Virus record (IMG/VR): IMGVR_UViG_3300030616_000016
Location: 167,648 to 231,647 of that record
Direction: 5' to 3' (one strand)
DNA: 64,000 nt
The notes below the pieces were generated by a model. The model was not told the origin of the DNA. It was given only the letters and a program-made list of their open reading frames with translations, and did no database searches. Of this stretch, positions 6,408 through 63,234 are shown in pieces. The translations under genes and the position numbers were made by a program. Position 1 is the stretch's first letter. Each line of letters starts with the position of its first letter.

Positions 6408-6422
6408 TCATGAGTATTGAAT

Positions 6423-8455: not shown

Positions 8456-9019
8456 ATGGCAGAAAAGCAAGTAGATAAAATTCCAGGTGAAATGCCTCCA
8501 GTCGAAATGCCTGTTCCGGAAGGAACACAGCAGCTTGCAGAAGATGAAGGCACAGGTCTTCCCAAAGGATTTGGCACCCCAGGTGCATCTGGCGCCCCAG
8601 GGGTACATCGGCCAGAACCATCTCTAAACCCAGAAGAAAAACCAGTAGACACACCTGATGTCAGTCGCGGAGATATTCCAGCCGAGATTCTTGGTCTTGA
8701 GCAATTTCTTCCAGCCGGGCTTACTGTAGAAATGGTTTGGCAATATAAACAGCAGTATGGAAATGTTTATATTGTTGAGGTCTGTGATCAGATCTATCTA
8801 TATCGTGCAATGGCCAAGCCTGAATACAAGAGCATCATGCAGATGGAAGGCGCTACAAGAGAAATGCAGGAAGAAAAGATTGCTGAGAAATGCGTTCTCT
8901 TCCCTGCGCTTGGTATTGAAGGCCTTAGAGTTGGACTGGCTGGTTTGGCATCGACTCTCACAGAGTATATTATGAGAGCCAGTGGATTTGGAGCGATGTC
9001 CACACCAACAAAATTATAG
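8456..9019 (+). CDS. Tail assembly chaperone
   Basis: YKQQYGNVYIVEV...YLYRAMAKPEYK...EKIAEKCVLFP...GLASTLTEYIMRASGF, with a disordered Pro-rich N-terminus. Lies between the tube and tape-measure genes. Confidence 0.72.
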   Translation: MAEKQVDKIPGEMPPVEMPVPEGTQQLAEDEGTGLPKGFGTPGASGAPGVHRPEPSLNPEEKPVDTPDVSRGDIPAEILGLEQFLPAGLTVEMVWQYKQQYGNVYIVEVCDQIYLYRAMAKPEYKSIMQMEGATREMQEEKIAEKCVLFPALGIEGLRVGLAGLASTLTEYIMRASGFGAMSTPTKL

Positions 9020-9028
9020 AGGATATAA

Positions 9029-9793
9029 ATGGGAGAATTATGCGAGGCCTATCTAGGTCCAGAATATCTTCCAGGTCCTCTTATATCGGGTGAATATTTA
9101 AAAGGTGAGGTGGCAGAAGATCCAATTTTGTCACCTCATCTTGCACCTTATATCGCCGCTCTATTAAAGAAGTACGACGATATATTTCATGTTAAGTATA
9201 ATGATCAGGATTTTATAATCCGGCCATTGACTTCAAATGAATATAAGATACTGTGTAAGCTTAGGTTATACTTCGATCCTCAATTAGGGTTCGAAAAGAC
9301 AAGGCCTAGGTTTAGTGTTGTAAGCCTAGAAGATATATTTATAGACTGTATTCTTTATCCTGAGAATGTACTTGATATGGATTTAGATGCATATGTTGTT
9401 GATATGCTTATAGAGACTGCAATACAATATTCGGGATGGGATTCACAGGAGGATATATTTGTAACAAAAGCTCAAATGCAAGCTCATGTAACATCAGATC
9501 TATTAGAGGGCATGTTTACATTTATTAGACGAGCACACCCAGGTCTTGGTGATCGCGATCTTGAAAACAAGAATATTATTGATATAATGAAGTTAATAGC
9601 AAGTGCTGAATTGATATTGGATAAGCCATTCGAGATAGTCACCAAAGATGATAAATCAGATGCTTCTAAAATATCAACCGAAGTTATGATCAAAGAAGAC
9701 TTGGCAGGTCTTAATAAGCTTAATATGCAAGGCTTAAATAAGCCGGAGCTAGAATATGCCCGTAACGCCCAGAGAAGAACAGGAAAGAAGTAG
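9029..9793 (+). CDS. Second tail assembly chaperone (paralog of the upstream gene)
   Basis: LKKYDDIFHV...FIIRPLTSNEYK...DCILYP...LIETAIQYSGW parallels the previous protein. It has its own AGAGGA RBS. Confidence 0.68.
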   Translation: MGELCEAYLGPEYLPGPLISGEYLKGEVAEDPILSPHLAPYIAALLKKYDDIFHVKYNDQDFIIRPLTSNEYKILCKLRLYFDPQLGFEKTRPRFSVVSLEDIFIDCILYPENVLDMDLDAYVVDMLIETAIQYSGWDSQEDIFVTKAQMQAHVTSDLLEGMFTFIRRAHPGLGDRDLENKNIIDIMKLIASAELILDKPFEIVTKDDKSDASKISTEVMIKEDLAGLNKLNMQGLNKPELEYARNAQRRTGKK

Positions 9794-12700
9794 TGGATGG
9801 CTTGGTTATGGCGCGGGATCATTAGCTGTTCTAGCTGGCGCATATATGCTTGGGAAGAATCCAAAGACGCTATACGCAATGGGCGAAACTTTGGACACCG
9901 CAGTATCAGCTATATCAGATGTAACCACCTTTGGTAAGCAACACATAGTAGAAAATCTTAGTAGAATCACTGGCAAGTTCGGTTCTTCCATAGAGACAGC
10001 TGCCAGAAGCCCTTCATCTACAAAAGCACTTAATCCAGAAATATTCAATTCCCTGCAAGGCGCTCTAAGCGCCTGGGAATCTGGCGCCGCAACTACACAG
10101 ACACTTAGAGACGCTCTTGCTGCCAAGTTCTCTAACGTAACGACGGTTAGACCGGGTGTACGTAATCTTCAAGTAAAAGAGATAACACAAGCATTCAGTG
10201 ATATCACTCCTGACGACCCTTTCACTTTATTTGGAAGATCTATAGATAAGAAGGGCGCTGGTCTTCTTAAACAGGCTCAAGAGATAGGAATTGTAGACAA
10301 AGACTGGGTTGCTGACAAAGGCATGTTTATTGATGGTCAGAGATTGGTTGACGCCAATATATTCAGGCCTGAGAAGTGGGGAGAATCTCTTGTAAAAACA
10401 TTACGTGGTGCTACTGGCGGATTCCTTACCGACTCATTACTGCCAAGTACCCATCTTCTTCGAGAGATTCCAGATATAGCTGAGATCTCAACAAAAGGGT
10501 TGGGCAAGCATATAAAAGAGGGAACACTAGATAAAGCCTTTAAGATTGGCGATCAACTTGTTGGTATAACAAAAGATAATTTTGTTGTTGACTTGCCTAA
10601 GCTTCGTGTTGGCCCAGTAGGAAATGCTATTTCTAAGGCACACGCTATAAGAAAGGGGCTTGTAAGACATAGAACAGTTGATGAGATGAAGGAGCTTCTC
10701 GCTTCCAGGGGGCAAGATCTTAATCCGCGTCAAGAAAAGCTATATAGAGCATTAGAAAATAGATTCCTTAGCGAGTATGTTGGCATTGGTCCTCAATACG
10801 CAAGTGAAACGGCGCTTCCAAAGATGCTGCATGGCTGGCTGGCAAAGTTCTACCAGACGGACCTTAAGCCAATATCGATGATTCCAGGCAAGTCATTCGA
10901 TGAGGTATGGGAAAATCTAAGCATTGGTCAAAGAGTCAAGGTTATGGCCAAAGGAGATGTTGATAGCGTCGCCTGGGCCAGAACTTCGATTGCTGGCGAT
11001 CAAGACATTCGATCTTTTGAACAGATACAAGAGATAAAAAGAGCTATCCATGGAGAAAGCTGGGAAGCTGCGCTGGATCCGAGTGGTGAAATATCTAAAA
11101 CAACATCGGTGTTTGGAAGAAGATCAGTAACCAATGCAGAGCAGTTTATGGCAGAAATGCTTGATGAAGAATTCAAGCACACTATGTCACACAACTACTA
11201 TGCCTATGATACTGCTGAACTTGCTGGTAACTGGGCACATACTGTCTTCACGACTCCATTTAGAATAGCATCCAACATGTTTGGATTTGGACTCAAGCAT
11301 GACTCGTTAGGAAAGACTGCGCTCAGAGCCACGGTTGGCATTCCTATGGCCGGATATCTCGCATGGCAGGGAGCAAACTATTTAGATTTTCTTACTGAGC
11401 AGACAACGACATTTAGTCCAATCAAAGGTGTTGCCAGAACATATGCAGAAGCTCAGATAGCCAAACAAAGCATGGCTAATCTTATAGGCATATCATATGC
11501 ATCTAAAACAGCAGAAAGTATGATTGGAATAGATATCGATTCTCCTATTTCCGTTGCGCTTAGAAGCATAGGACTGCCTATACTTGGAGCTAAGATTGGA
11601 CAAAAGATAAATCCTGGAATGGGACGACCTGGTATGTATGTCGGTATTGGGCTAGCCGCGCTTACTTTATCAGACGACCTATCTAGAGATGCAGATGAAT
11701 TAAGAGATATATATGAAGGAAGAAAAGAAGTTCCTGTTAGAAAGTCTCGCTGGTGGATGCTTGGATGTTTTGACCCTCACCAAAGCGTAATGCTTGAAGA
11801 TGGAAGCCTTGTCCATGCAGAAGATGTAGACAGTGGAATGGTAGTCATTAACGATATAGGAGAATATACAGAGGTGACTAATGTCTCTGTAAGAATTACC
11901 GATAAAGACGAGGAGCTAATTTCTATTCTGCCTCATGGATTTCCTTATCCAACAAAAATAACAGGCAATCATGAAGTTCTTGTCCACAGACGTCCTTGTA
12001 TCAAGCCATATACATATAAAACTGGATGTCATCCAAGACGAATCACGAATAGTTCGTGTAGATCTTGTCCGAATGCCTCGCCGGATCTTAATCTGTCATA
12101 TGTCAGAGCCGATGAGCTGAGGCCGGACGACTTTCTTATTCTGCCTAGGCTAAAATGCAACACCTCTATTGGGCTTATCGACCTGTCTGATTACCATGAT
12201 CTATTTGTCATCGATAAAGAAAAAATAGCAGCAGGTCAAAGATTGCATGGTGGTGTTCGGCGTGCTCCAAAAAGCAAATATACTAATAGAATTATACATC
12301 CCGATAAAGATCTCGGTATGCTTTTAGGTTGGGTTTTAGCAGAAGGAAGTAAGCATAGCGACAACTCTATTGAATGTGTGTATAATATTAGTGAAAGCGA
12401 TTTTGCCTTGCAAATGGGTAAAATAGCGCATGCCAAGTTTGGAGCTAGTTATAGCCTATCTGAAAGAGATGGTAGTACTGGGAGAATTGTTATAGGTAGT
12501 AAATTTTTACTCGGTTTTTGTACCAGTGTTGGCATACTGCCAAATAAAACTCCGAACATACGCAGAATGCTAGATTATGGTGAGTGTTTTGTTAAAGGGT
12601 TTGTCATAGGTGCTGTATATGGAGATGGAAGCTATACCGACGGCCATTGGAGATTCAAGGCGAAAAGACTACAGACATGTATTTTCTTGAGAGATATGAT

Positions 12701-15194
12701 CCATGCAGTCGGAGGAGCTGCTTCTATATGTCGAAACTCGTCTATGCTTGAAGGCAAGAGGTTTGATGCGTATTCAGTCACAATAATAGAATTAGATTTT
12801 GCTCTTATTAAGCATTATTATAAAGGAATACCAAAAACCAAGCAGTTAAAATCTGCAATTGGCTGTAAAGACTATGTTTTATATACAATCAGAAGCATAG
12901 TCGCCTCCGATCCTCCTGAAATTGTTTATGACTTCCATGTTAGAGACAGGAATAGCATCTGTTTGCCTGGGCATGTTGTTCACAACTCAGATCCCTTTGA
13001 AGGTGGAGACACTGATTATTACAGGCCTCACCTTATAGCCACAATGCTTTCTGATACCTCTGCCATGGAAGCAAAGTATGGTTCCAAGTCCGCATATTGG
13101 TCTCATGGCACAATGTTCCCTACGCCTCATAATGTATTTGGCTTGAGTATACTGGCTGACCCATACTATGTAGAAAGAAAGCATTACTATGATAGGCCGT
13201 ATCCAATAACAGGAAGATCTAATCTTGCAGAATTTCCTATCTGGGGCAACATACTTGATGCTACTCTTGGAGAGGTTATTAAGCCTACCAAGGTAATGCA
13301 TGAAAATGAACTGGCGCATTATATAACTCAAACCCCTGAGTTCTCTGGAGACAAAGGACTGCAGAGTGTAGCTCAGCAGCTGTCTCTAGCACAAATTAGG
13401 CCTGGTAAGGTGCTGCCAAGAGTAGAAGGAACGCAGGATGACATTGGTCATGCAATATATGACATGACTGAATTTGCTGGATTAAAGGGATTTCTATTTA
13501 CGTCTCTCAAGAAGCAAGTCACTGGAAGCCCTGACTTCTCTGACCAAGGCGCAAGATGGGCTAGTGCAGATGATATTTATAATAAATCTGATGCATACTA
13601 TGATCTACAGCTTGGTGGTATGCTAGGTGCAACCGAGTTCTTCAGAAGATTTTTACCACATAGACAAAACCAAATAGACTATGTTAATCCTCTAAGCAAT
13701 GAAGCTCCGGCATGGCTCCCTGGTAAAAGGTCTGTTTTTGGCGATACAGACTTTATAGATTTCCATAGCTCAGATCCATACACTCGTATCAAGGAGGGGT
13801 CTAAGCGTCTTCCAGGTGCTCAGTATGAAGCTATACACGAACTACATTCTGGTAAAAAAGGCGAATATGATGCTTTTGATAGAATGAAGATATTGGCTGA
13901 TGTCAGCCCATATTCTAATGCCTTCAAGTACTATAAGAACATAGTGGATAAGATGGCTCAGGACGGCCAGCTAGACGGCTATTGGATGGATGAATACCTT
14001 GAAATAGACAGGAGAATTAAAGGAGAAGGACTGCCCGACTTTGAAGCAGAGACAGCAAGTAAAGAGCTTGGTATTTCTGGTGCAGCTGCTGGGACTGCTG
14101 GCCTACTAAATAATCACCTTAGAATACCATGGGTAGGTACTAAGTTAATGAGCATGGATCAAGATCCGCTGGTAGACTATCAAGAGAAGATTTCATTCAA
14201 TAATGACTTCAATGATTGGACTAAACCAATAGACACTATGTTGATGCCATACATGCGCGCACAAAGTGCAAGAGGAGCTATCTCTGGAGCTTTTGGTGGT
14301 GCAACACTAGGTGTTCTTAGCTCAGCTGCTGGAGGTTCATACGCCGGTACTGTAGGAGCTATCGGAGCAGGCGTTGGAACAGTGATGGGATTGGCCGGCG
14401 TTAATGCTCCTGAAAATGAAATCAGAAGAAGGTCTATGGAAGAATACTTCGATAGCTTAGAATATCTGAAGTACAATAAACTAGCTGACAAGGCTGGCGA
14501 ACAAGGCAATATTGCTCTTGCAAATAGATTAAGAAGAATGTCTAAGAGAACCATGGTAGGACTCGACTATTCTCAAGACACAACCTCTTTCTATAAAGCA
14601 GCTTACAGCGCTCTCCCAAAACCGGACAGGCAGTATCTGCAGGCTTTTATCCAGGTTGATCCGGGTAAAAGACCTGAAGTCCTTGACAAAGTTCCAGATT
14701 ATATGCAGCCTATTCTTATGCGTCTATGGAAAGATCCAAAGTCCGAAGCTGATGCCGGCAAGCTATCAAGAGTAGACCAAAACAATAGAGCCCATCAGGC
14801 TGCTTTATCGTATGTAAACAGTCACGGCGGCGTCCCAGATGATGATTCTATGGTATGGCATCCAGATATTAGCATTGAAGATGTCAAACTAAAGACCATT
14901 AAAAATCTTGGTGCTGACATACATAACTTTGGGTTTTGGGGAACTGATGAGCGAGATCTTGAAAGAACGCGGCCTTATATCAAACCCCTTCCATTCTCAT
15001 ATAATACAAACACTTACCAATCTAATAGGTTGAATTTTACTAATAATATGTTACAATATGGTTTTAGCAATGTGTATGTTGATTTGATAAGAAATCCTAG
15101 CAGGCAGCCAGAAAATGTATATTCAATTAATATTCAGAGAAATAGACTTGGTGACATTGCAGGGTTTGACAGCAGGTCTGAGGGAAGGTTCTAA
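9756..15194 (+). CDS. Tape-measure-like protein containing an intein (1812-aa precursor, 1405 aa spliced)
   Basis: Follows the chaperones. Helical and Ala/Gly-rich, with hydrophobic and glycine-zipper segments (WLGYGAGSLAVLAGAY; GAISGAFGGATLGVL...GAIGAGVGTVMGLAG). The intein occupies aa 671-1077. Confidence 0.72.
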   Translation: MPVTPREEQERSSGWLGYGAGSLAVLAGAYMLGKNPKTLYAMGETLDTAVSAISDVTTFGKQHIVENLSRITGKFGSSIETAARSPSSTKALNPEIFNSLQGALSAWESGAATTQTLRDALAAKFSNVTTVRPGVRNLQVKEITQAFSDITPDDPFTLFGRSIDKKGAGLLKQAQEIGIVDKDWVADKGMFIDGQRLVDANIFRPEKWGESLVKTLRGATGGFLTDSLLPSTHLLREIPDIAEISTKGLGKHIKEGTLDKAFKIGDQLVGITKDNFVVDLPKLRVGPVGNAISKAHAIRKGLVRHRTVDEMKELLASRGQDLNPRQEKLYRALENRFLSEYVGIGPQYASETALPKMLHGWLAKFYQTDLKPISMIPGKSFDEVWENLSIGQRVKVMAKGDVDSVAWARTSIAGDQDIRSFEQIQEIKRAIHGESWEAALDPSGEISKTTSVFGRRSVTNAEQFMAEMLDEEFKHTMSHNYYAYDTAELAGNWAHTVFTTPFRIASNMFGFGLKHDSLGKTALRATVGIPMAGYLAWQGANYLDFLTEQTTTFSPIKGVARTYAEAQIAKQSMANLIGISYASKTAESMIGIDIDSPISVALRSIGLPILGAKIGQKINPGMGRPGMYVGIGLAALTLSDDLSRDADELRDIYEGRKEVPVRKSRWWMLGCFDPHQSVMLEDGSLVHAEDVDSGMVVINDIGEYTEVTNVSVRITDKDEELISILPHGFPYPTKITGNHEVLVHRRPCIKPYTYKTGCHPRRITNSSCRSCPNASPDLNLSYVRADELRPDDFLILPRLKCNTSIGLIDLSDYHDLFVIDKEKIAAGQRLHGGVRRAPKSKYTNRIIHPDKDLGMLLGWVLAEGSKHSDNSIECVYNISESDFALQMGKIAHAKFGASYSLSERDGSTGRIVIGSKFLLGFCTSVGILPNKTPNIRRMLDYGECFVKGFVIGAVYGDGSYTDGHWRFKAKRLQTCIFLRDMIHAVGGAASICRNSSMLEGKRFDAYSVTIIELDFALIKHYYKGIPKTKQLKSAIGCKDYVLYTIRSIVASDPPEIVYDFHVRDRNSICLPGHVVHNSDPFEGGDTDYYRPHLIATMLSDTSAMEAKYGSKSAYWSHGTMFPTPHNVFGLSILADPYYVERKHYYDRPYPITGRSNLAEFPIWGNILDATLGEVIKPTKVMHENELAHYITQTPEFSGDKGLQSVAQQLSLAQIRPGKVLPRVEGTQDDIGHAIYDMTEFAGLKGFLFTSLKKQVTGSPDFSDQGARWASADDIYNKSDAYYDLQLGGMLGATEFFRRFLPHRQNQIDYVNPLSNEAPAWLPGKRSVFGDTDFIDFHSSDPYTRIKEGSKRLPGAQYEAIHELHSGKKGEYDAFDRMKILADVSPYSNAFKYYKNIVDKMAQDGQLDGYWMDEYLEIDRRIKGEGLPDFEAETASKELGISGAAAGTAGLLNNHLRIPWVGTKLMSMDQDPLVDYQEKISFNNDFNDWTKPIDTMLMPYMRAQSARGAISGAFGGATLGVLSSAAGGSYAGTVGAIGAGVGTVMGLAGVNAPENEIRRRSMEEYFDSLEYLKYNKLADKAGEQGNIALANRLRRMSKRTMVGLDYSQDTTSFYKAAYSALPKPDRQYLQAFIQVDPGKRPEVLDKVPDYMQPILMRLWKDPKSEADAGKLSRVDQNNRAHQAALSYVNSHGGVPDDDSMVWHPDISIEDVKLKTIKNLGADIHNFGFWGTDERDLERTRPYIKPLPFSYNTNTYQSNRLNFTNNMLQYGFSNVYVDLIRNPSRQPENVYSINIQRNRLGDIAGFDSRSEGRF
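11766..12986 (+). mobile_element. Intein with LAGLIDADG homing endonuclease (407 aa)
   Basis: Block A CFDPHQSVMLEDGS, block B KITGNHEVL, LAGLIDADG blocks LGMLLGWVLAEGS and FVIGAVYGDGS, block F VYDFHV, terminal HN followed by a +1 Ser. The exteins join as RWWMLG|SDPFEGG. Confidence 0.93.
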
Positions 15195-18100
15195 TGCCTG
15201 ACAAGCCAGAACAAAGAAGTGGATCAGTAGCGCCTTGGTTGGTTGGCGGAGGGCTATTAGCTTTTGGTGGGTATCAGGGATATAAGCACTTCGGCCAGAA
15301 GCACTTAGGAAATATGGCAAATAATCTAGGCGATGAGATTAAAGCTGTTGTGCCATCAGTAGAACAAACCGAACAAATAATCAAACCAAGTTCTTCCACA
15401 GAATTCTGGCATAAGTTTGACAGAGCAGGAACTCCTGCAGCTGGCATTGGAGCCACAAATTCATTTATGCATGATATAGTTGATGTCGAAGATGCACACT
15501 ATAAAGGATTCGATGAGATTTTAACTCCTAAGAGAGCTGCTGCTTATAACAAAATTGTGACAGCTCAGCTTACCGACTTTCAGTCTGTTATGAATAATAC
15601 ACACGGAACCAATCTTCTTAATATAGAAGCAATCAACGAGTCTATAAATAGTGCAAATACTGGTTTTATTGATGGCATCAGCGAAAGAGCAAAGAGAAAT
15701 ACAGAAACAGCTGGCTTAATAGGAAGGTCTGATGTAGAAGATATATTTTTTGCTCATTATGGAAGAAAGGGTAAAAGAGCTCAAGAGTTCATTGCAAGAG
15801 AGCAGGCTGCTGTATCACAACTGGAAGATATAGCAAGCCGGCTTACAGCATCAACTGGGCATCAAGTTAAAATACAGGCCATTAACCGCAGCGGTGTAGC
15901 TCCAGAAATAGGGCTCAGAGTAGGTGGCGAGTTTATTTCTATGGGCGCCGCCACTGGAACAAGGCTTCAGTTTGGTTCAAATGTATATCAGGGGCCTCAA
16001 GCCATTCTTGGCAGAACAGCTGAAGGCAGGCTAAAGACCATGACCTTTCATGAAGCTTCTGTAAATGTTCTTGAACAAAAAATGGGCGAGCTAAAAGGCA
16101 TCAAGTCTTCAAGTCAGCTTAGATCCAAGATATCCGGTATATTATCCGAGCCTAGAGAGGCCGCAATCTTTTCTAGTCCTGAAGATAAGATGAGAGCTAT
16201 AGCTGGTGTTCCTGGACAACCTATGAGCGCTGCCGATGTCGCTAGAAGTGGTAACATTGTAACTATGCCGAGTATAGTTAAAGAATCAGGCGCACAAGCT
16301 TCAAGAGATGCTGCTGAAACTCTTAGAAGAATAACTGAATGGGCAGGCAAAGAGGATTGGGACGAGACTACTCGCGCAAGAATGTTTCATATAAAACCTG
16401 GACAAAGGATTACTCCAGAGCGCGTGCTAAGGCATTTCGTTACAGCTGTTAAAGGAGATAAGGTAGACAGACTGACTTTCTCTGCTTTTACTTCTTTGAA
16501 AGCTCTTACGGTTGGAGGGATGCTCACTCCGTTTCAAAACATAGCCAAGGAAGGCGGCGAGGAACTACGCACAGGATTGCTTAGAAAATCTCAATCCGCC
16601 AAATATAAATATAATAAGTATTATGGCTATGGAAGGGAAATGAGACGGCAGAATCTTGCTGGGCTTCTTGCAGGTGAGGGTTCTGAGCGTTTGGCTGGAA
16701 GCGTAAGTGGCAAGGTTCATGCTATAGATAAAGTTCAGAAATTAATTGATGGTGAATGGGTAGACGTTCCAGACAAACTAGTTGGCGCGTTAGGTGGTAA
16801 ATTTTCAGGTGGTTCTGGTGTTATGGCTATTAGTGAGGAATTCGGCGATTTATCTCACGAGTCATCTGGAGATTATATGCTCAAAAAGATAAGCGGCTCT
16901 CCTAACAAGAAAATCAAAGATACAATTAATGAACTTGCAAGAAAGGGCAAGCTAGATGTAAGGAATCTAAAAGCAGCGGGTATTACAGTTCGCAAAAAAG
17001 ATGCTCAGGGGCTATTGCGAACTGAAACAGGAAGCCTGGAATTTAGCCAGGCTGCTTTAAAGCAAGCAAGCGAGACAGAAAACTCTCTGGTTATACCCGG
17101 TAAAAGACTTAGAAAAATAAGTGAATCTGGCTATGCTTTTAGGCTTGGGCCTACTAGTGTTTCAGCTACAAGAGGTACTCGATTTATAGGCAAAGGCTCA
17201 GAGGGAGTTCTTGGTGCTTTGTGGTCAACGAATATTAAACCGGAAGTAAGATCTCAAATGGCTTATGCCACAATACAGAGCCTAATGGAAGAATCAGATA
17301 TCAAATATTCTCGCAATTTAGACGAGTTTGCAGCTACTATATCTGGTGAACTAGATAGAGCCGATCCTAATGCCAGATATTTTAAAGGCGTAGAAGGCAA
17401 TCAAAAAAGATGGCAGCAGCTTACAGATCTAATGACTGAAAGAATGCAGAAAGAAGGAGTAGATAAACGTAGCCTGGATAAGTTTAGAGCATCTATGGAA
17501 GGATATGGTCCTGGTAAGACCATAGAATTTGCTGCTGAGGGTCAACACTACAGAGCTAGAGCTACGACACTAACTGGTACTGCGTTTCCTAGAATGTATC
17601 CTCTTGAAGAGGAGACAGCATTGCATGGTACAGTAGGCAGATATAAATCTGAGTATACAAAGAAGCTGGATGATTTTAATAAAGCATTGGCTGGACATGA
17701 GGACCTTCCTGGTGTTCAAAGATTCATGGAAGCTCAAACAAAGAAACATAGTATTCTTGAAGATGTTTTACGCCACGAATCTGTGCCAGATACACTGATA
17801 AGAAACTTCAATGAAGCTGAAACTCAACAGCTAGAGGCCATAAGAGAAATACAAAGAATGGAAGGCGGTCCAATAAAAGGCATAGAGAAGAAGTTTATTG
17901 CACTCAAAACAAGCGAAGAACAGTTTATGTCCAAGCTTACACAGAGAGCGCAAAGTACTCCACGCAGATATAGACCACAAGACTTTATGATGATGGCTAT
18001 AAAAGCTCATGCTGACCCTGAAAACAGAGACACAGGTGTGCTTGAGTATCTGCTTCGCATGCAGGAAGGTAGCCAGGCTCGCCGCAGCTTTCAAAACGTG

Positions 18101-20698: not shown

Positions 20699-23600
20699 TG
20701 AATAAAAATATTAAAATAGGTCCAGTACAATTAAGTGTTGACGCTGATAGCTTTTCTATATCAGATAGAAAGGTTAATACAATGGTGCCTGGTCTTCGAA
20801 GTAATATACCAAAGGTCATCAATACAGGAAAGAGCAGGCTCGAATATTCCTTCAGTGCTATATTCGCAAACGAAGAAGAGATCAACACAAAGCTAAGACC
20901 TATTATTGCCTATTTCAAAGCAGTTCCTTTTATTACTGTAAAATCAGATGTATTGAATAAGCTTCTTGCAACTCGTCTTGTATCAAAAGCTGTTGCGAAT
21001 CAAAGCAGCTCCTATGATAAGCTAGGTTCTAATTTTATACAGAATAAACTTATCAGCGATCTTCGTAATGCAATATACGAACATCTTTTAGATCCTATTG
21101 TTAAGAGCTACATGAATTTGACTGTTATAGATAAAACTATAATAGATCAGTTTATAAAAGAAAAACTTGGTGTGTCATTGGATGATATAAATCGACCAGC
21201 TCTAAGAACTCTTGTGTCAAGATATGTAGAGCTAAATTACTATGTGTCTAAGGCCACAATCCCTATCAAGGGTGGATCTAACGAACAGCAGATACGTGAA
21301 TTAAGAAAGCATATAAGAGAAAAACTCGCTGGCCAGCTAAAAGAAAGAGATGTTATAGACAGAGCAAAAACTGCTGGTATAGTACAGGTTGCTGATGCCT
21401 CTGATGTATATGATGGTGACACTTTTGTTGTTAGTGGAACAACATATCGTTTATTTGGCGTAGATGCATTTGAAACAGTAAGACCAGGAACTCAGCTTGG
21501 TCCAGGTCAAGAAAAGAAACCTGAGAAATCATACGCAGCTTCCGCTAAATCCTTTCTTGTAGACAGACTTGTTGGTCAGAACTTTACTCTATCTGAAGTT
21601 GGAACTAGAACATATAATCGTGTTTTAGGAATATGCGAATCCGTATCTCCAAGCCATGGAGAGAATGCTAATGTTGGTTTAGAGATGGTTAGCCAAGGCA
21701 TAGCGCTTCCATCTGGCGTTGCAAGTATGGGTAGATATGCAACTATAGAAAGCTTGCCATATCTCAAAGCTGCTAAAACTGCTGCAGAATCTGGGTTGGG
21801 GATATGGAGTCAATCTGAAATTCAAGTGCCAGAGCTTTGGAGAAAGTATGCACAAAATATTAACAACTTTGCTAATCCGTCAAGTCCGACTGTTTTAGAT
21901 TCAGACATACAAGAATTGACAATAAAGCCTGCATCTGTTCTTAAACAGCTTATCGATTCTTTAATTGAAGAGCTTGAGGGTCGTACTCCTAATATAGGTA
22001 TTAACTTTGTTGCATCTGCTCAGCCAATCTTAGATGCATATGAGCAGAGCATTGTATCTGAAGACAAGAAAAAAGAGGACGTAGATAGAGTTTCTGAGTT
22101 TATTGGATTCCCAGAAGATCTTATCCCGTCATGCTTTGCTGGTATTTCATATTCAGCAGTGCACGATTTACCACAGGCCATACAGGCACAGTTTCATTTC
22201 TCAGTGTTCAATCATGCTCCTTATGGTCCTACTTTTGGCTTCAAGTCTGACGTAGTTCAGCAAAACGGAGTTTCAGCGGTAGTATCAGATCCAGACATAA
22301 CATATTCACGTTTAGTGCAAGGCTATGTTAGCAAGGAATTTTTGGAGGAGCCAGCATCCAAACAATACCTAACAGCATACACGCCAGCTAAAGACTTTAC
22401 CATACACTATAATGATGTAGACACGATTGTTAAGAAGACATCAAAAGCTAAATTAAGAGAGTCAGATATTAAGACTAGCGAAAGAGTGCAGAAGTCAAAG
22501 GAAATGTTGAACAAGCGCGAATCTGTTGTGTTCATAGGGAAGCGAATTACTATATCTCCTGATTCTGGTGAGATAGAAATATCAATATTGGAGGATGAAG
22601 AAAAGAAACAGTCAACTGTACATAAGCTTAATAATATACAAATTGAATCTGTAAGCTGCAACATAACAAATAACATTGTCCATTTACCTATTGAAGCTGC
22701 CGCTATTCCAACTGCTCAACACATTGGAAGAGGTATAGGTTCTGTGTCGTTAGAGATTTCTTCTACAGATGAGAACTCTATGGCTGTTTTTAGAACTCTT
22801 GAGCATGCTATTCAAAATGCAATGCATATATCCAATCAGTATGGAGCTCCTACTTCTTTCAGAATAACTAATCCAACAATTAATTTGTCTGGAGCCAAAG
22901 ACTTTGTTTTCGATAATATAGTTGTTAGCAATGACAGATCAGCTCCAGGTAAGTATAATATGAGGATTAATCTGGTCGAAAGCTTTAATGCCGAGGAAGA
23001 CACAGAAGAGAAATTGATACCTAAGATTGATTTTGATTTCAAGGATGGCTCTGGTGTCGCAAAGAAAGTAGTAGAGGCATTAAAAGAACACGCTGGTAGT
23101 CCATTTTATGACAAGTTTATGTCTACTTTCTTCCCGATGACAAAGCCTAGTAGGTCTGTTTCTTCTGATATAGAAGAGTATGTAAATACATATCCTCTTA
23201 TGCTTCTATTTGCTCACACCCATAAAGACACGCCAAATCCGGTTCTTTTGGATGCATACGGAGAAAATATAGGATTTATAGAAAGCTTTTCTAATATTGT
23301 AAATAGAGTTAAATATGACAACATAACTCCCAAAGCTGTTAATATGAGAGACAATCTCATTGAAAGATTGTATCAAATTGATCGCGCATGGTTCGTAGAT
23401 ATAGCTAGCTCTCTTCCAATAAACATAAGCACTGCAATAAATGAAAGAAATCCTTTTAGCACAGCGTCTTCAGTACAAGATGATGTAAGAAAGTTTAGCA
23501 ACCAGTCAATAGTATTTGACAAGGATAATTATAATCCAAGCTATTTGATAAAAGGAGGTAAGTGGGTCATTGGCCCATGGGGTAAAGGACCAGGCGCTAC

Positions 23601-26600
23601 TGCAGGATCAACAGATGCCATGTTAAATCGCAGAGACTACTTTTTGCAGTTCTTATCTACAAAAGATTTTACCAAAAAGTATTTGTTAAACTTATCACAA
23701 GGTTGTTTTAGTGCTGCATATTATTTCAGAAATCTTTTTGAAGATGAATTAGATAGCAACGAGCAAGCTAAGAAAGCCTTTTATAATTGCATCTCATTTC
23801 TTCTTAGCGAAGCTCTAGAATCTAGTCCTAATTTTGAAGGCTTCTTTGGTGCTTGGATTACAAGACAGGTAGGCCTTTATTCTGAAGACCTAGATAGAAG
23901 TCTTTTGCCCACAAGACAAGAGCCAACTACATTTAATGATCTTAATCTACCTACATATAGAGATGTATTTGGCAAAACAGACTCAGTAGTAATTGAAGAA
24001 AGAAAGAAGTTGATTTCTGACTTGCGTGCTATTAGCATTTATATTCCAGAGATATCATACAATGTAGATACTATATCTAGTCCGTATCAATTTTATTCCG
24101 ACATTGTTACTCAGTATCATGTTGGCAAGAGTAATATTGGCCTTCATATGATTAGCGGTTCTAATTTATATAGATCCCAAGACAAGGCTCTCGATAATGT
24201 ATATGACACTGCAGTAGAAATTTACTCAAAAGAAACTGAGACGATGAAATCTAGGCTGCCTGTTTCTGATGCAGTACTTCCAAGAAATAAAGAGTTTTGG
24301 TCGCGTTTAGACCCAAATGCAATAGCTCGTTCTCCAGATGATGTCGTTGAGCCTGGGTGGATGTATGATCTTCAGTGGGAAGATGTGTCTGATACGGCAT
24401 CTGTTACAATGAACCATCTTAAAAAGGTGCATTCTAATAATGTTAACAAGATATCGCCAATAACAACTAATGACTTAGAAGACAATGACATACTTAACAA
24501 CTATGAAGATCTAACTGTAGGCGATAATTACATAGAAAAGATAAAAGAAGTATCTAGTAAAAAAAGAATGTTCAAAGGGTCGCAAATAGGCGATATTAAC
24601 TTTGCTGAAGTTCCTTTACAGTCTATATCTTCTGTTGATAAGTCTAAAAAGAAGTATCCGTCAAGCGGGACAAGTACTACGACTAACTTGCCTGGTAGTT
24701 TTTCTACTGACTCTATCGATACTGATAGACATACTAACAGATTAACAAGAGATAGATATAAAGACGACAAGATATCTTCTATTAGAAAAGCTTATCCAGG
24801 ATACGCGATATATTTTCTTGAAGAGGATGCAGAGGACTGGGGTTATCTTGATGATTATTACAGGTACGACTCAGTTATATCTTGGGACGTTGTACAATCC
24901 AAAAAAGATATAGACACTGCAGTAGTTAAATTTACTAACTTTAAGGGCGTGTTAAGCAATCAGTCTCCAAACAAAGATCGCCTAAAAGATGAAGTTGTTA
25001 GTGCAACTGAAACTGTTGATGAAAGTATTTCTGAGCCAGTGGATCCTAACTCTGCTTATGAGGGAGACCTAAGTGGTCTAGAAGGGCTGTTAACAGCCTT
25101 TAAGCTTAGACAAGGAACTAGAATTATTATCAAGTCTGGATTTACAACTAAGATTTCTGAGATGGAGACTATATTTACCGGACAAGTGGTCGAAGTATCC
25201 CCTGGAGATATCATCACTGTTATTTGTCAAGGATATGGATCTCAGCTTATGTCTTCCATGAATAAAGAGTTTATGTGGGATGATCATAACTTCCCAGAAA
25301 TATTATCAACGGTTCTTTATGACACAACTTACTTTGGCAAATGGGAGAGATTTGTTGATAGGCTTCCTGGTCAAAGTAAAATGTATAGCGGAACCGTAGG
25401 ATCAATTATTTCTCACAAGCTTATAGGCGATTATTTTCCTAGCACCGCTGATGATAATATATATAGAATAGCAAAACCTCACGATAATTTCTTTAAGTGG
25501 ATGTGGGATTGGGCGTGGGGAACAAATTGGCAAATTCGAGGACCTATTTGGTCTAATATATTGACAATGACAAGATATGTGCCAAATACGATACTAACAA
25601 TTCGTCCTTACGATGGACGAGCTACGCTGATATGGAATGATTATGATGGCTACTATATTGACACTAACCACATAAGCAGTCTTAGTTCTCAAATCGGCCA
25701 TGCTGCCTCGGATTATTTGCTAAGGTCTGGTCTTAAACAAAACGACAACCAGACCAAATCAGAAATGCTTGGTGAGATTTTATCCAATGATATTTTTACA
25801 TCTAATGGATCATCTAGTCCGTATATGAGAAGCGAACAAAGGCTAAGCGATGCCAGGTCAAATTTATACAACCACGGCATATATGATTTTAATGATAAAA
25901 TAGACTTGATTAATGAGGAGCTGATATTAACCATTTTGTCTGATTGGTTCATGGATAAGTTTCTTAAAAATATAATAATTAGTAGTGAAGAGCTATTTTC
26001 AAATCATGTAGTTAAGCTAAGAATGGATTCTACCGTACCAATCTCTATTGAACCTATTCTGAAGACCATGGAAAGACCTAGTCAAAAATATAGCGAAGCT
26101 GTGCCATTTTCTCCGCTTTCTAAGCCTACTGGAAATAGAAAAGTCGAAAGCAAGTTTTATGTGTCTGATGTTAGCGGAAATATTGCAAGGGGTATTATTC
26201 CCATAGCATACTTACTACCAGAAAACGTAAATATTGCTAAAGACAGAGACAATATAAGAATAGATCAAATTAAAAAAATAGTTAGTGCTGTAGTTAGATA
26301 TGCAGAGAATCATCCTGGCATAGGTATCAATATCAAAGACGGCAAAACTATGGATGCTATTATGCAGTCTTTAGATATGGAGAATATCATACCTGGATAC
26401 TTGGCTATGTATGATAGTCGTAATTTCTTAGCTGCATTTGAAATATATCTTCCAATTAGTCGCGAGGTTGTATCGCAGATATTATCGTATTTACTTCCTG
26501 CGATATATGGATCTGTAGACTATGTCAGCAGGAATCCCGGCACATTTTTATCTGACGTAAACAATAGCGCAGATAAACTAAAAGATCCGTATGTACCTCC

Positions 26601-27549
26601 TAATATGAGACCTATAGTCGAAACACACTCTGCGGTTAGTGGTGTAAATATCATTAAAAACAATATTAGAGCTACAATGTCTGAGTCGGCCAATACTGTT
26701 TCTCTCACTAAAGAGGACTCTAATAGTACTATGGAGCTTTCAGTTTCTCCTGGTTTAACAACCAAGCTTGCCAAGTCAATTGTAGACATAAACTGTGAAG
26801 ATGTTCAGGTGAGAACTCAGGCAATATTTGGTGCCCTACAAGAAGAAATGCAGAAAATGTATAGAGGTCTTCTTATTTTATCTGGCAATCCAAGAATTAA
26901 ACCTTATCATTATATTAGAGTAGACGATTATTATAATAGTATGTTTGGATCTATAGAGGTAGATAAGGTTATTCATTCTTTCAATCATAAGAGCGGATTT
27001 ACATCTTCTATTGTTCCTCATATGATTGTTAGAGCCAGAACAGATCGTGGTTATTATGCTGCTATGATGGCAAATGCCGAGGCTGGTTTTAAGACTATGC
27101 TTGGTTTAGGAGCAGCGTTGGCTCTAGCTATAGGTACGTTTGGCATTGGATGGATTGGAATTATAGCTGGTGTTGGCATAGGTATAGGCACTGGAATAAC
27201 AACTAGTAAGTTTCTAGGTCCTGGAGCAGGTCAGCCAGGATGGTTTCTTGGTATACCATACCCCACGTTTTCTGGCCAGGGCTTATTTGATAAATCTAGG
27301 CTCAATCCTGTCAAAATAGCTCCGCTTATATACAAGGGTGCGCCGTATGTTGTTGGGCTTGAGGGATGGGACAATAAACAATGGACATATTCAGAATATA
27401 AACGAGAGCTTATGCGACTATATGAAGCCGGATGGGACAAATTTCATTCGCAAATCTCAGACGCTAAGAACGCTTTGTGGGATGCTGCTGGTGAAGCATA
27501 TCAGGCAGGCCATCATACCGCAGAACATATTTGGTGGAATAGGAGGTAG
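20698..27549 (+). CDS. Giant baseplate hub-like protein with a staphylococcal nuclease (SNase) domain
   Basis: SNase motifs VYDGDTF, YRLFGVDAFET, TYNRVLG, NVGLEMVSQGIA, GLGIWS. Hub-type motifs GTRIIIKSGF...IFTGQVVEV...VICQGYG and SGNPRIKPYHYI...IEVDKVIHSF. C-terminal hydrophobic hairpin. Confidence 0.72.
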   Translation: MNKNIKIGPVQLSVDADSFSISDRKVNTMVPGLRSNIPKVINTGKSRLEYSFSAIFANEEEINTKLRPIIAYFKAVPFITVKSDVLNKLLATRLVSKAVANQSSSYDKLGSNFIQNKLISDLRNAIYEHLLDPIVKSYMNLTVIDKTIIDQFIKEKLGVSLDDINRPALRTLVSRYVELNYYVSKATIPIKGGSNEQQIRELRKHIREKLAGQLKERDVIDRAKTAGIVQVADASDVYDGDTFVVSGTTYRLFGVDAFETVRPGTQLGPGQEKKPEKSYAASAKSFLVDRLVGQNFTLSEVGTRTYNRVLGICESVSPSHGENANVGLEMVSQGIALPSGVASMGRYATIESLPYLKAAKTAAESGLGIWSQSEIQVPELWRKYAQNINNFANPSSPTVLDSDIQELTIKPASVLKQLIDSLIEELEGRTPNIGINFVASAQPILDAYEQSIVSEDKKKEDVDRVSEFIGFPEDLIPSCFAGISYSAVHDLPQAIQAQFHFSVFNHAPYGPTFGFKSDVVQQNGVSAVVSDPDITYSRLVQGYVSKEFLEEPASKQYLTAYTPAKDFTIHYNDVDTIVKKTSKAKLRESDIKTSERVQKSKEMLNKRESVVFIGKRITISPDSGEIEISILEDEEKKQSTVHKLNNIQIESVSCNITNNIVHLPIEAAAIPTAQHIGRGIGSVSLEISSTDENSMAVFRTLEHAIQNAMHISNQYGAPTSFRITNPTINLSGAKDFVFDNIVVSNDRSAPGKYNMRINLVESFNAEEDTEEKLIPKIDFDFKDGSGVAKKVVEALKEHAGSPFYDKFMSTFFPMTKPSRSVSSDIEEYVNTYPLMLLFAHTHKDTPNPVLLDAYGENIGFIESFSNIVNRVKYDNITPKAVNMRDNLIERLYQIDRAWFVDIASSLPINISTAINERNPFSTASSVQDDVRKFSNQSIVFDKDNYNPSYLIKGGKWVIGPWGKGPGATAGSTDAMLNRRDYFLQFLSTKDFTKKYLLNLSQGCFSAAYYFRNLFEDELDSNEQAKKAFYNCISFLLSEALESSPNFEGFFGAWITRQVGLYSEDLDRSLLPTRQEPTTFNDLNLPTYRDVFGKTDSVVIEERKKLISDLRAISIYIPEISYNVDTISSPYQFYSDIVTQYHVGKSNIGLHMISGSNLYRSQDKALDNVYDTAVEIYSKETETMKSRLPVSDAVLPRNKEFWSRLDPNAIARSPDDVVEPGWMYDLQWEDVSDTASVTMNHLKKVHSNNVNKISPITTNDLEDNDILNNYEDLTVGDNYIEKIKEVSSKKRMFKGSQIGDINFAEVPLQSISSVDKSKKKYPSSGTSTTTNLPGSFSTDSIDTDRHTNRLTRDRYKDDKISSIRKAYPGYAIYFLEEDAEDWGYLDDYYRYDSVISWDVVQSKKDIDTAVVKFTNFKGVLSNQSPNKDRLKDEVVSATETVDESISEPVDPNSAYEGDLSGLEGLLTAFKLRQGTRIIIKSGFTTKISEMETIFTGQVVEVSPGDIITVICQGYGSQLMSSMNKEFMWDDHNFPEILSTVLYDTTYFGKWERFVDRLPGQSKMYSGTVGSIISHKLIGDYFPSTADDNIYRIAKPHDNFFKWMWDWAWGTNWQIRGPIWSNILTMTRYVPNTILTIRPYDGRATLIWNDYDGYYIDTNHISSLSSQIGHAASDYLLRSGLKQNDNQTKSEMLGEILSNDIFTSNGSSSPYMRSEQRLSDARSNLYNHGIYDFNDKIDLINEELILTILSDWFMDKFLKNIIISSEELFSNHVVKLRMDSTVPISIEPILKTMERPSQKYSEAVPFSPLSKPTGNRKVESKFYVSDVSGNIARGIIPIAYLLPENVNIAKDRDNIRIDQIKKIVSAVVRYAENHPGIGINIKDGKTMDAIMQSLDMENIIPGYLAMYDSRNFLAAFEIYLPISREVVSQILSYLLPAIYGSVDYVSRNPGTFLSDVNNSADKLKDPYVPPNMRPIVETHSAVSGVNIIKNNIRATMSESANTVSLTKEDSNSTMELSVSPGLTTKLAKSIVDINCEDVQVRTQAIFGALQEEMQKMYRGLLILSGNPRIKPYHYIRVDDYYNSMFGSIEVDKVIHSFNHKSGFTSSIVPHMIVRARTDRGYYAAMMANAEAGFKTMLGLGAALALAIGTFGIGWIGIIAGVGIGIGTGITTSKFLGPGAGQPGWFLGIPYPTFSGQGLFDKSRLNPVKIAPLIYKGAPYVVGLEGWDNKQWTYSEYKRELMRLYEAGWDKFHSQISDAKNALWDAAGEAYQAGHHTAEHIWWNRR

Positions 27550-62929: not shown

Positions 62930-63234
62930 TGGTATATGTTAATAAGTTCGATATCAACAAGAATTCTAATGCTAGAGAACTACAACAGTTCCTTTCTGAA
63001 AACAGCATCAGCTCTGGTAAGATACTTAAAATAGAAAGCATTCCCAGGAACGATGACTTTCTTAGTATTATAATATTCTGGACTGATGAAGATATAAGCA
63101 GCTCTATAGAAGTTGCATTTGAAGAGACAGAGTCACAGGCTACCAGAGCTGTTATAGATGCACGCATAGGCACTGAGAATGACGGTGCTAATAATGGAAA
63201 ATTAATATTAAGAACCGGAATTATTCCGCAATGA
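62929..63234 (+). CDS. Small protein paralogous to the N-terminus of the next gene
   Basis: KFDINKNSNARELQQFLSENSI...IIIFWTD versus KFDIPSNSDAANIQDFMKANDI...VIIFYID. Confidence 0.65.
   Translation: MVYVNKFDINKNSNARELQQFLSENSISSGKILKIESIPRNDDFLSIIIFWTDEDISSSIEVAFEETESQATRAVIDARIGTENDGANNGKLILRTGIIPQ

What the first reader, a model, noticed from the sequence alone, without database searches (positions are those of the whole stretch)
9756..27549. Three coupled giant genes form a possible injected payload cassette: membrane channel, polymerase and nuclease
Seen: 17.8 kb in three ORFs joined by one-base TAATG stop/start overlaps at 15194 and 20698. Each has hydrophobic Gly-rich segments: the tape-measure-like protein has a glycine zipper, the RNAP-like protein has N- and C-terminal helices, and the hub has MLGLGAALALAIGTFGIGWIGIIAGVGIGIGTG. 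Typical myoviruses have one tape measure followed by a modest hub. Inference: a contractile tail that delivers enzymes along with DNA, analogous to the three large ejection proteins of crAss-like podoviruses and to effector-fused VgrG hubs of type VI secretion systems.
Basis: partly seen in the sequence, partly recalled or inferred. Interest (0 to 1): 0.8.

Follow-up and report, generated by a model that had tools for sequence, protein, structure and literature searches.

The report
Tail-lumen RNA-polymerase-like protein in jumbo phage
In a large marine-sediment phage with a contractile tail, the three giant genes between the tail chaperones and the baseplate are a conserved set, and the middle one, in the position where a related phage's tape measure gene lies, carries the catalytic core of an RNA polymerase, so the tail may deliver a transcription enzyme together with the DNA.

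Summary
Three ORFs (1812, 1834 and 2283 aa) are joined by TAATG overlaps, and each has the hydrophobic Gly/Ala-rich segments described. The trio is not a one-off. The same order (sheath, tube, two chaperones, g1, middle gene, giant hub, baseplate) occurs in Bacillus phage 0305phi8-36 (gp145/146/147), in ME3 and WH1, and in nearly all of the 80 IMG/VR loci fetched (212 relatives detected).

- g1 is a gp145-family virion protein with a confident, compact, apparently new fold.
- g2 sits in the "tape measure" position. In 28 of 28 relatives of its clade, a DxDxD loop is the best-conserved element.
  - A family profile hits almost only the largest RNA polymerase subunits in the PDB, at the catalytic barrel.
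  - All 50 top Foldseek hits of the model are such subunits.
  - A second, beta-type barrel was not found, so polymerase activity is unproven.
- g3 is a gp147-type hub with a staphylococcal-nuclease domain where relatives carry cell-wall hydrolases.

The closest precedent is the tape-measure-fused virion RNA polymerase of Thermus siphophage P23-45. This looks like a new variant of it, in contractile-tailed jumbo phages.

The parts
8456..9019 (+). Tail assembly chaperone-like gene 1 (187 aa)
   Evidence: Lies between the tube paralogues and g1. [quoted passage not shown]
9029..9793 (+). Tail assembly chaperone-like gene 2 (254 aa); overlaps the start of g1 by 38 nt
   Evidence: The same position as gp144 in 0305phi8-36 and ME3_34 in ME3.
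9756..15194 (+). g1: gp145-family giant virion protein (1812 aa as encoded, about 1405 aa after splicing)
   Evidence: 93 homologues and 212 relatives in IMG/VR. Homologous to 0305phi8-36 ORF145, a virion protein by mass spectrometry. AlphaFold model of the core of the intein-free orthologue: pLDDT 82.8, pTM 0.81. No PDB match.
9792..9857 (+). g1 N-terminal hydrophobic Gly/Ala-rich helix (aa 13-34)
   Evidence: A similar segment lies near the N-terminus of most family members.
11766..12986 (+). Intein with LAGLIDADG homing-endonuclease motifs (g1 aa 671-1077, 407 aa)
   Evidence: An exact 407-aa insertion relative to orthologues P0003 and P0004. It starts with Cys, ends with His-Asn, and has Ser at +1, with two LAGLIDADG-like motifs. 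Pfam Intein_splicing E=2.7e-5, below the gathering score. It sits in the most conserved block of the family.
14274..14414 (+). g1 glycine zipper (aa 1507-1553), uncharged, 52-57% Gly+Ala
15194..20698 (+). g2: middle gene in the published tape-measure position; RNA-polymerase-like giant protein (1834 aa)
   Evidence: Only three detectable relatives among 1.84 billion representatives. Family membership by profile-profile links. The C-terminal module is shared with 0305phi8-36 gp146.
15218..15274 (+). g2 N-terminal hydrophobic Gly-rich segment (aa 9-27)
   Evidence: Conserved in orthologues.
18491..19123 (+). beta-prime-like module of g2 (aa about 1100-1310): a 'hhP...RP...G' block, a 'GKxG...S.R' block and the catalytic double-psi beta-barrel
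   Evidence: Blocks aligned across 26 family members. PDB profile search: about 34 of 39 hits are the largest RNAP subunits. Foldseek: all top 50 are the same. Local pLDDT 78-92.
19052..19066 (+). DFDAD, candidate Mg-binding DxDxD loop (g2 aa 1287-1291)
   Evidence: ARDFDAD is invariant in the three orthologues at 29-47% overall identity. A DxDxD at the equivalent place in 28 of 28 clade-A middle proteins, against 1.0 expected.
19952..20695 (+). g2 C-terminal module (aa about 1587-1834): long helices, hydrophobic helix aa 1717-1737, Pro-rich stretch, terminal GRF
   Evidence: The best-conserved part among close relatives. The family HMM matches the C-terminus of 0305phi8-36 gp146 (E=2.8e-7) and of the short L005 middle protein.
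20698..27549 (+). g3: giant baseplate hub protein of the gp147 family (2283 aa)
   Evidence: tblastn hits to annotated hub proteins of 0305phi8-36, ME3 and KLEB27-3. Followed by gp25-like and gp6/J-like baseplate genes. Homologues listed.
21448..21813 (+). Staphylococcal-nuclease (SNase) domain of g3 (aa 251-372)
   Evidence: Pfam PF00565, E=1.4e-8, 35.5 bits against a cut-off of 21. Also present in the close orthologues P0099 and P0102. DGDT and RL.G.D..E strings visible in the sequence.
24745..25347 (+). Conserved hub block 1 (g3 aa 1350-1550)
   Evidence: Aligns with 0305phi8-36 gp147 aa 837-1010 and with distant hubs.
26578..27375 (+). Conserved hub block 2 (g3 aa 1961-2226), including the PHROG 20474 match
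27070..27219 (+). g3 C-terminal glycine-zipper transmembrane-like segment (aa 2125-2174)
   Evidence: Kyte-Doolittle mean 2.05, 11 small-xxx-small motifs.

Best explanation
The block is the tail-internal and hub gene set of a 0305phi8-36-like jumbo myovirus from marine sediment.

What is shown:
- g1 belongs to the gp145 family of virion proteins. It is a compact protein of apparently new fold with hydrophobic Gly-rich segments at both ends, and it must splice out a 407-aa intein to mature.
- g2 belongs to the family of proteins that occupy the published tape-measure position. It shares that family's C-terminal module.
- In this clade g2 also carries a beta-prime-type catalytic double-psi beta-barrel with a conserved DxDxD metal loop, the core of a two-barrel RNA polymerase.
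- g3 is the baseplate hub. In this clade a staphylococcal nuclease replaces the cell-wall hydrolase domains seen in relatives.

What is inferred:
- g1 and g2 are made in coupled amounts (one-base overlaps).
- With the help of the two upstream chaperones they are loaded into the tail-tube lumen in an extended state and docked by similar C-termini.
- After sheath contraction they leave ahead of the DNA and insert their hydrophobic segments into the cell envelope.
- The polymerase-like module of g2 then refolds at the cytoplasmic face and transcribes the first genes to enter. This is what was shown for the tape-measure-fused virion RNA polymerase gp96 of Thermus phage P23-45.
For: - Synteny of the trio.
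- Virion presence of gp145 and gp146 by mass spectrometry: notes of record EF583821.
- g2 motif: ARDFDAD invariant in orthologues. A DxDxD 350-650 aa from the C-terminus in 28 of 28 clade-A middle proteins, against 1.0 expected, and only 32 DxDxD anywhere in them.
- Family unity: hhalign links between clusters, G2-C4 95% (E=1.8e-8), C1-C5 97% (E=5.8e-10). For the weaker pairs the best local alignment is always the motif segment.
- RNAP link: the A3 profile against 177,635 PDB sequences gave about 34 of 39 hits to beta-prime/A190-type subunits at the catalytic barrel, the best E=0.0016. The phage AR9 beta-prime alignment spans about 150 residues, including the GKxG block.
- Fold: the model region g2 aa 1186-1356 has pLDDT 78-92 with the loop between two strands. 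All top 50 Foldseek PDB hits are the largest RNAP subunits, probability 0.63-1.0. As a control, the g1 model hit nothing.
- Atlas lead without the motif region: 84 of 100 named neighbours carry PF05183.
- Shared C-terminal module with gp146.
- Within-locus similarity of the g1 and g2 C-termini, permutation p about 0.002-0.003.
- Precedent: PMC10770324.
Against: - No beta-type second barrel was found in g2, g1 or elsewhere in the window. Without it, polymerase activity cannot be assumed.
- The g2 model is poor overall (pLDDT 60, pTM 0.36) and Foldseek TM-scores are 0.07-0.10.
- The sequence link to beta-prime rests largely on the loop. With nine columns around it deleted, the profile no longer finds E. 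coli beta-prime. The A3 alignment was anchored on the motif.
- 0305phi8-36 gp146, the short L005 middle protein, Moorella MTATph1 CDS0027 and the whole clade B lack the loop.
- The ME3_36 link is only suggestive.
- A 900-aa globular g1 core and a folded polymerase cannot fit a tail-tube lumen unless they are unfolded there.
- No virion, transcription or ejection data exist for this phage.
Confidence: 0.6

Rival explanations
1. g2 is simply the tape measure protein of a long contractile tail. The DxDxD barrel is a relic or a metal- or nucleic-acid-binding module with no polymerase activity, for example one that grips the leading DNA end or serves as an assembly domain.
For: The gene sits in the position of the published tape measure and shares its C-terminal module. 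No second barrel was found. The module is dispensable in some lineages. Much of g2 is predicted as long, low-confidence helices.
Against: The loop is the best-conserved element of a family that otherwise diverges beyond recognition: 28 of 28 against 1.0 expected. Three beta-prime blocks lie in the correct order. Conservation of all three Asp at such divergence argues for catalysis or metal binding under selection. The P23-45 precedent shows that such a fusion can be active.
Confidence: 0.25
2. g1, not g2, is the length-determining tape measure, because it directly follows the chaperones. g2 is a separate cargo enzyme that rides with it.
For: g1 follows the two chaperone genes immediately. It has terminal hydrophobic segments like many tape measures. 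g1 and g2 have similar C-termini.
Against: The g1 core (about 900 aa) is confidently predicted to be compact and globular (pLDDT 82.8, pTM 0.81). It is far better conserved than tape measures usually are. It hosts inteins at two or more sites, which is typical of proteins with critical conserved sites. Hardies et al. assigned the tape measure to gp146 from tail length.
Confidence: 0.2
3. The three proteins are capsid-internal ejection proteins, as in T7 or crAss-like podoviruses, that merely happen to be encoded in the tail module.
For: Their size and hydrophobic segments resemble ejection proteins. Folded domains would fit a capsid better than a tube lumen.
Against: g3 is homologous to baseplate hub proteins. 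The genes lie between the tail chaperones and the baseplate genes in every relative. There is no similarity to crAss-like or T7-like internal proteins.
Confidence: 0.08

Closest known systems
Thermus phage P23-45 gp96, tape measure protein fused to a two-barrel virion RNA polymerase (Chaban et al. 2024, PMC10770324)
   Same: A giant protein in the tape-measure position with hydrophobic segments and a DxDxD catalytic loop, otherwise unrecognisable by sequence. The polymerase module is present in some relatives and absent in others. Proposed delivery through the tail and transcription of the first genes.
   Different: P23-45 is a siphovirus with a non-contractile tail; this is a contractile-tailed jumbo phage. 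In gp96 the polymerase is N-terminal (aa 327-1124 of 5002); here the module lies in the C-terminal third. No sequence match to gp96 was returned. The profile and the fold point to beta-prime of multisubunit enzymes. Activity and a second barrel are shown for gp96 and not here.
Bacillus phage 0305phi8-36 gp145 / gp146 / gp147 (Hardies et al. 2007, PMC2147016)
   Same: The same three-gene order after a two-gene chaperone. g1 is homologous to gp145 and g3 to gp147. The g2 family shares the C-terminal module of gp146. The hub carries exchangeable enzymatic domains, and the BtI1 prophage-like relative has an SNase domain too.
   Different: gp146 has no DxDxD loop. 0305phi8-36 instead encodes a separate YonO-like polymerase (PMC7824862). 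gp147 carries cell-wall hydrolases rather than a nuclease. No intein is reported in the gp145 record.
crAss-like phage phi14:2 gp66 virion RNA polymerase and neighbouring giant proteins
   Same: A giant virion protein whose polymerase nature is recognisable only through the DxDxD loop, encoded beside other giant genes.
   Different: Podovirus; the proteins are thought to be stored in the capsid or muzzle. No sequence similarity was found. gp66 has both barrels in one chain.
Evolved VgrG and hub-effector fusions of type VI secretion systems and other contractile injection systems
   Same: A hub or spike protein of a contractile machine fused to an enzymatic domain that reaches the target first.
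   Different: An analogy only. No VgrG, gp27 or gpD profile or structure match was obtained directly.

Membership tests
Two-barrel RNA polymerase | Conserved DxDxD metal-binding loop | tested here: met
   DFDAD at g2 aa 1287-1291, invariant in orthologues. 28 of 28 clade-A relatives have the loop at the equivalent position, against 1.0 expected.
Two-barrel RNA polymerase | beta-prime-type double-psi beta-barrel and flanking blocks around the loop | tested here: met
   PDB profile hits are almost exclusively the largest RNAP subunits at the catalytic barrel. All top 50 Foldseek hits are such subunits. Local pLDDT 78-92. Caveats: TM-scores are low, and the sequence signal vanishes when the loop columns are removed.
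Two-barrel RNA polymerase | Second (beta-type) barrel supplying conserved basic residues | tested here: inconclusive
   Not detected in the N-terminal 800 aa of the family, nor against E. coli rpoB, nor in other window ORFs. g2 aa 1-786 was not modelled, and only 64 kb of the 232-kb genome is visible.
Two-barrel RNA polymerase | Template-dependent RNA synthesis | not testable with these tools
   Needs a biochemical assay.
Virion (injected) RNA polymerase | Protein present in virions and delivered to the cell | not testable with these tools
   Indirect only. 0305phi8-36 gp146 was detected in virions by mass spectrometry. WH1 gp095 is annotated as a virion structural protein.
Tail tape measure protein | Gene between the tail chaperones and the hub | tested here: met
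   Both g1 and g2 lie there.
Tail tape measure protein | Homology to an assigned tape measure | tested here: met
   Met for the g2 family C-terminal module only: the family HMM against 0305phi8-36 gp146 aa 2379-2524 gives E=2.8e-7. The full-length comparison found nothing.
Tail tape measure protein | Extended, mostly helical, non-globular chain whose length sets tail length | tested here: inconclusive
   The g1 core is globular. g2 has long, low-confidence helices after the barrel. No tail length is known for this phage.
Intein (with LAGLIDADG homing endonuclease) | Cys/Ser at position 1, His-Asn at the end, Ser/Thr/Cys at +1 | tested here: met
   Cys 671, His-Asn 1076-1077, Ser 1078.
Intein (with LAGLIDADG homing endonuclease) | Precise in-frame insertion relative to intein-free orthologues | tested here: met
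   Zero orthologue residues fall in the 407 intein columns, and the flanks align perfectly. Distant homologues align continuously across the site.
Intein (with LAGLIDADG homing endonuclease) | Match to intein and endonuclease profiles | tested here: inconclusive
   Pfam Intein_splicing E=2.7e-5, but below the gathering score. NCBIfam gave nothing. Two LAGLIDADG-like motifs were found by pattern.
Baseplate hub (T4 gp27 / P2 gpD type) | Homology to an assigned hub, and a position upstream of the gp25-like and J-like genes | tested here: met
Baseplate hub (T4 gp27 / P2 gpD type) | Direct profile or structure match to gp27, gpD or VgrG | tested here: inconclusive
   No Pfam hub domain. The hub-region profile found nothing in the PDB. 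The link rests on the HMM-HMM result of Hardies et al. for gp147.
Staphylococcal nuclease (PF00565) | Profile match above the curated cut-off | tested here: met
   35.5 bits against a cut-off of 21, E=1.4e-8.
crAss-like ejection or cargo proteins | Sequence similarity to those proteins | tested here: not met
   No PHROG match for g1 or g2. No tblastn match for g2 in 50,697 phage records. BFVD matches for g1 are family members only.

The most novel reading that the evidence does not exclude
A large, mostly uncultured lineage of contractile-tailed jumbo phages loads its tail lumen with two co-docked giant proteins. One is a beta-prime-only 'half' RNA polymerase that lacks a recognisable second barrel. 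It would work either with an unrecognisably diverged partner module or with the new-fold g1 protein. That would make it a new architecture of transcription enzyme, delivered by a contractile tail.
Probability: 0.15. Interest if true: 0.9.

Novelty: new variant of a known kind. Interest (0 to 1): 0.68.

Why it matters
How large phages start transcription before any phage gene is expressed is known for only a few systems: N4, phiKZ-like phages, crAss-like phages and P23-45. If the middle gene is an active polymerase, a widespread lineage of jumbo myoviruses (212 relatives in IMG/VR alone) would carry its first transcription enzyme in the tail. That would extend the single siphovirus precedent to contractile tails. 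It would also show that genes annotated "tape measure" or "hypothetical" can hide polymerases. A cultured relative, Bacillus cereus phage vB_BceM_WH1 gp095, has the loop, so the idea is directly testable. In addition, the g1 family is a large, well-conserved virion protein of unknown fold that repeatedly hosts inteins, which marks it as functionally critical.

Tried and rejected
- Direct sequence searches with g1, g2 and g3 against the PDB found nothing.
- Pfam, PHROGs and NCBIfam gave only SNase, a weak intein match and a hub-related PHROG.
- g2 gave no match in the phage collection by megablast or tblastn and no word-index homologues.
- g1 against g2 by BLASTP showed no paralogy beyond the short termini.
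- hhalign of the g2 clade against ME3_36 and 0305phi8-36 gp146 at full length found nothing. Only the later family HMM found the C-terminal module.
- An iterative HMM search seeded by g2 alone stalled after recruiting L006. Cluster-to-cluster hhalign was needed.
- Searches for a beta-type barrel failed.
- The g1 core hit only its own family in BFVD and nothing in the PDB.
- The hub profile against the PDB found nothing.
- The idea that g1 supplies the beta subunit was considered and set aside: its model has almost no beta structure and no RNAP match.
- The control with the loop columns removed lost the E. coli beta-prime match. This limits how much weight the sequence evidence can bear.
- Read laying could not settle whether an intein-free allele exists.
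- Tail lengths of cultured relatives were not retrieved, so the length-ruler test was not done.
Full report
**Observation**

The window is the last 64 kb of a 231,647-bp IMG/VR contig, IMGVR_UViG_3300030616_000016. Near-identical sequence occurs in two marine-sediment metagenomes. The three ORFs are exactly as described: 9756..15194 (1812 aa), 15194..20698 (1834 aa) and 20698..27549 (2283 aa). Both junctions read TAATG. The hydrophobic Gly/Ala-rich segments are real:
- g1 aa 13-34, plus an uncharged 47-residue glycine zipper at aa 1507-1553;
- g2 aa 9-27 and 1717-1737;
- g3 aa 2125-2174.

**Context**

Upstream lie a tail sheath gene (4299..5648), two tube-like paralogues, and two small genes that resemble a two-gene tail chaperone. 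Downstream lie gp25-like and gp6/J-like baseplate genes. So the trio sits in the slot where a myovirus normally has its tape measure and hub.

**Synteny**

- The two closest relatives have the same trio: 1395/1835/2264 aa and 1393/1872/2328 aa.
- More distant metagenomic loci also have it.
- Cultured phages have it too: Bacillus phage 0305phi8-36 ORF145/146/147, Acinetobacter phage ME3 genes 35/36/37 and Bacillus phage WH1 gp096/095/094.
- A profile of the g1 core found 212 relatives in IMG/VR. In the 80 loci fetched, the g1-type gene is nearly always followed directly by a large middle gene and then a giant hub.
- A one-base overlap between g1 and the middle gene occurs in 27 of 57 non-redundant loci.
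- Hardies et al. (PMC2147016) described this module in 2007. They assigned orf146, the middle gene, as the tape measure on the basis of tail length. They assigned gp147 as a hyperplastic T4 gp27 / P2 gpD hub with exchangeable enzymatic domains, and noted an SNase domain in the BtI1 relative.
- The GenBank record marks gp145 and gp146 as virion proteins found by mass spectrometry.

**g1**

- *Intein.* g1 has 93 homologues of 1,150-2,500 aa. The nearest ones are about 410 aa shorter. Alignment shows an exact 407-residue insertion (aa 671-1077) that begins with Cys, ends with His-Asn, is followed by Ser, and holds two LAGLIDADG-like motifs. Pfam's intein splicing model matches weakly.
- *Insertion site.* The site lies in the most conserved block of the family, and intein-free homologues align straight across it. 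Other family members carry LAGLIDADG or Hint domains. For P0059 and P0089 the alignments begin exactly at this site, which suggests an insertion at the same place. For P0017 and P0023 there is a roughly 390-aa break near spliced position 920-930, a second site.
- *Fold.* An AlphaFold model of the core of the intein-free orthologue is confident and compact (pLDDT 82.8, pTM 0.81). It has no match in the PDB by profile or by fold. In BFVD it matches only family members.
- *Conclusion.* g1 is a conserved virion protein of unknown, apparently new fold. It is not a typical extended tape measure.

**g2**

- *Rarity.* g2 has only three detectable relatives among 1.84 billion representative proteins.
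- *Motif.* In those relatives ARDFDAD is invariant at 29-47% overall identity. The middle genes harvested next to g1 relatives fall into many small clusters. In the clade to which the window belongs, all 28 have a DxDxD 350-650 residues from the C-terminus, against 1.0 expected from composition, and there are only 32 DxDxD anywhere in them.
- *Family unity.* Profile-profile comparisons join the clusters: 95-97% probability for several pairs. For the weaker pairs the best local alignment is always the motif segment.
- *Link to RNA polymerases by sequence.* A profile of the family core searched against all PDB sequences returned 39 hits. About 34 of them are the largest subunits of multisubunit RNA polymerases, aligned at the catalytic double-psi beta-barrel. 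The best is yeast Pol I A190 (E=0.0016). The phage AR9 beta-prime alignment extends about 150 residues upstream.
- *Block order.* By eye, three beta-prime blocks occur in the right order.
- *Link by structure.* The AlphaFold model of g2 aa 787-1727 is poor overall but confident for aa 1186-1356, with the loop between two strands. All 50 best Foldseek hits in the PDB are the largest RNA polymerase subunits.
- *Weak independent lead.* A language-model search of aa 150-1120, which excludes the loop, gave mostly PF05183 neighbours.

**Caveats on g2**

- No beta-type second barrel was found.
- The alignment was anchored on the motif. When the loop columns are removed, the profile no longer finds E. 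coli beta-prime.
- TM-scores are low.
- The module is absent from 0305phi8-36 gp146, from a short 745-aa middle protein, from Moorella phage MTATph1 and from a whole second clade.
- What all middle proteins share is a C-terminal module. The family HMM matches gp146 aa 2379-2524 at E=2.8e-7.
- The cultured phage WH1 does have the loop (DHDGD at aa 1996 of gp095), and the HMM matches it at E=1e-10.

**g3**

- The C-terminal 930 residues contain two blocks conserved with the hubs of 0305phi8-36, ME3 and others.
- The N-terminal part has an SNase domain above Pfam's cut-off.
- Close relatives also have SNase. Distant ones carry peptidase M23, glucosaminidase or lysozyme instead.
- A direct link to gp27, gpD or VgrG was not obtained.

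**Mechanism**

The closest precedent is the tape measure protein gp96 of Thermus siphophage P23-45. Its N-terminal part is an active two-barrel virion RNA polymerase that was found through its DFDGD loop. Relatives of P23-45 lack the fusion (PMC10770324). By analogy, I propose the following, all of it inference:
- g1 and g2 are loaded into the tube lumen with the help of the chaperones.
- They are docked by similar C-termini; within-locus similarity has a permutation p of about 0.002-0.003.
- They are released on contraction and insert into the envelope.
- g2 then transcribes the entering DNA.

**Novelty**

The trio, the hub with swappable domains and the SNase variant are already known. In the searchable literature I found no report of three things:
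- the polymerase-like module in the tape-measure-position gene of contractile-tailed jumbo phages;
- its wide distribution;
- the intein in the gp145 family.

I rate the finding a new variant of a known kind.

Noticed in passing
window 11766-12986: A 407-aa LAGLIDADG intein interrupts g1. Other family members carry LAGLIDADG or Hint inserts. P0059 and P0089 apparently have one at the same site, and P0017 and P0023 at a second site about 250 residues further on. This suggests repeated intein invasion of this virion protein family.
   Followed up: partly
window 11810-12866: In a second marine-sediment sample (X2) with a strain about 99% identical, the contigs cover the flanks of the intein but have zero depth across its interior. 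No joining contig was seen, and X2 has other coverage holes. A possible intein-free allele, unproven.
   Followed up: partly
window 15171-15191 and 20675-20695 (C-termini of g1 and g2): g1 and g2 both end in GRF. In other lineages the two proteins of one locus also end alike, for example YMNRMGLL / YIMKRMGI in L036. Permutation p is about 0.002-0.003, which suggests that both dock to the same partner.
   Followed up: partly
loci L043-L086 (clade B): In a second clade, g1-type proteins are about 2,050-2,240 aa. The middle gene lacks any DxDxD and is often split into two ORFs, followed by a 150-aa gene before the hub.
   Followed up: no
window 5668-6360 and 6417-7400: Two adjacent paralogues both match PHROG 9206, labelled 'major head protein'. 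They lie where 0305phi8-36 has its tail tube (gp140) and tube paralogue (gp141), so the PHROG label is probably wrong for them.
   Followed up: no
proteins P0020 and P0034 (g1 family): Some g1-family members carry an SNase domain themselves, so the nuclease domain has moved between the g1-type protein and the hub in different lineages.
   Followed up: no
L089 19272-20759 (Moorella phage MTATph1): A transposase gene sits between the middle gene and the hub-like 'endolysin' gene, breaking the otherwise tight trio.
   Followed up: no
window 57467-61084: A 1205-aa ORF with no family match lies in a stretch of higher GC (0.41-0.43), with negative AT skew at 58001-60000. A 359-aa ORF overlaps it in another frame (58515..59594).
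   Followed up: no
BFVD entry A0A6J5MAW2: The best structural relative of the g1 core is named 'Large polyvalent protein associated domain-containing protein' in UniProt. This hints that some relatives have been classed with the polyvalent proteins thought to be delivered with phage DNA.
   Followed up: no
window 63231-63995: The last ORF has short collagen-like or tail-fibre-like repeat matches (several PHROG tail fibre families, E about 3e-4).
   Followed up: no
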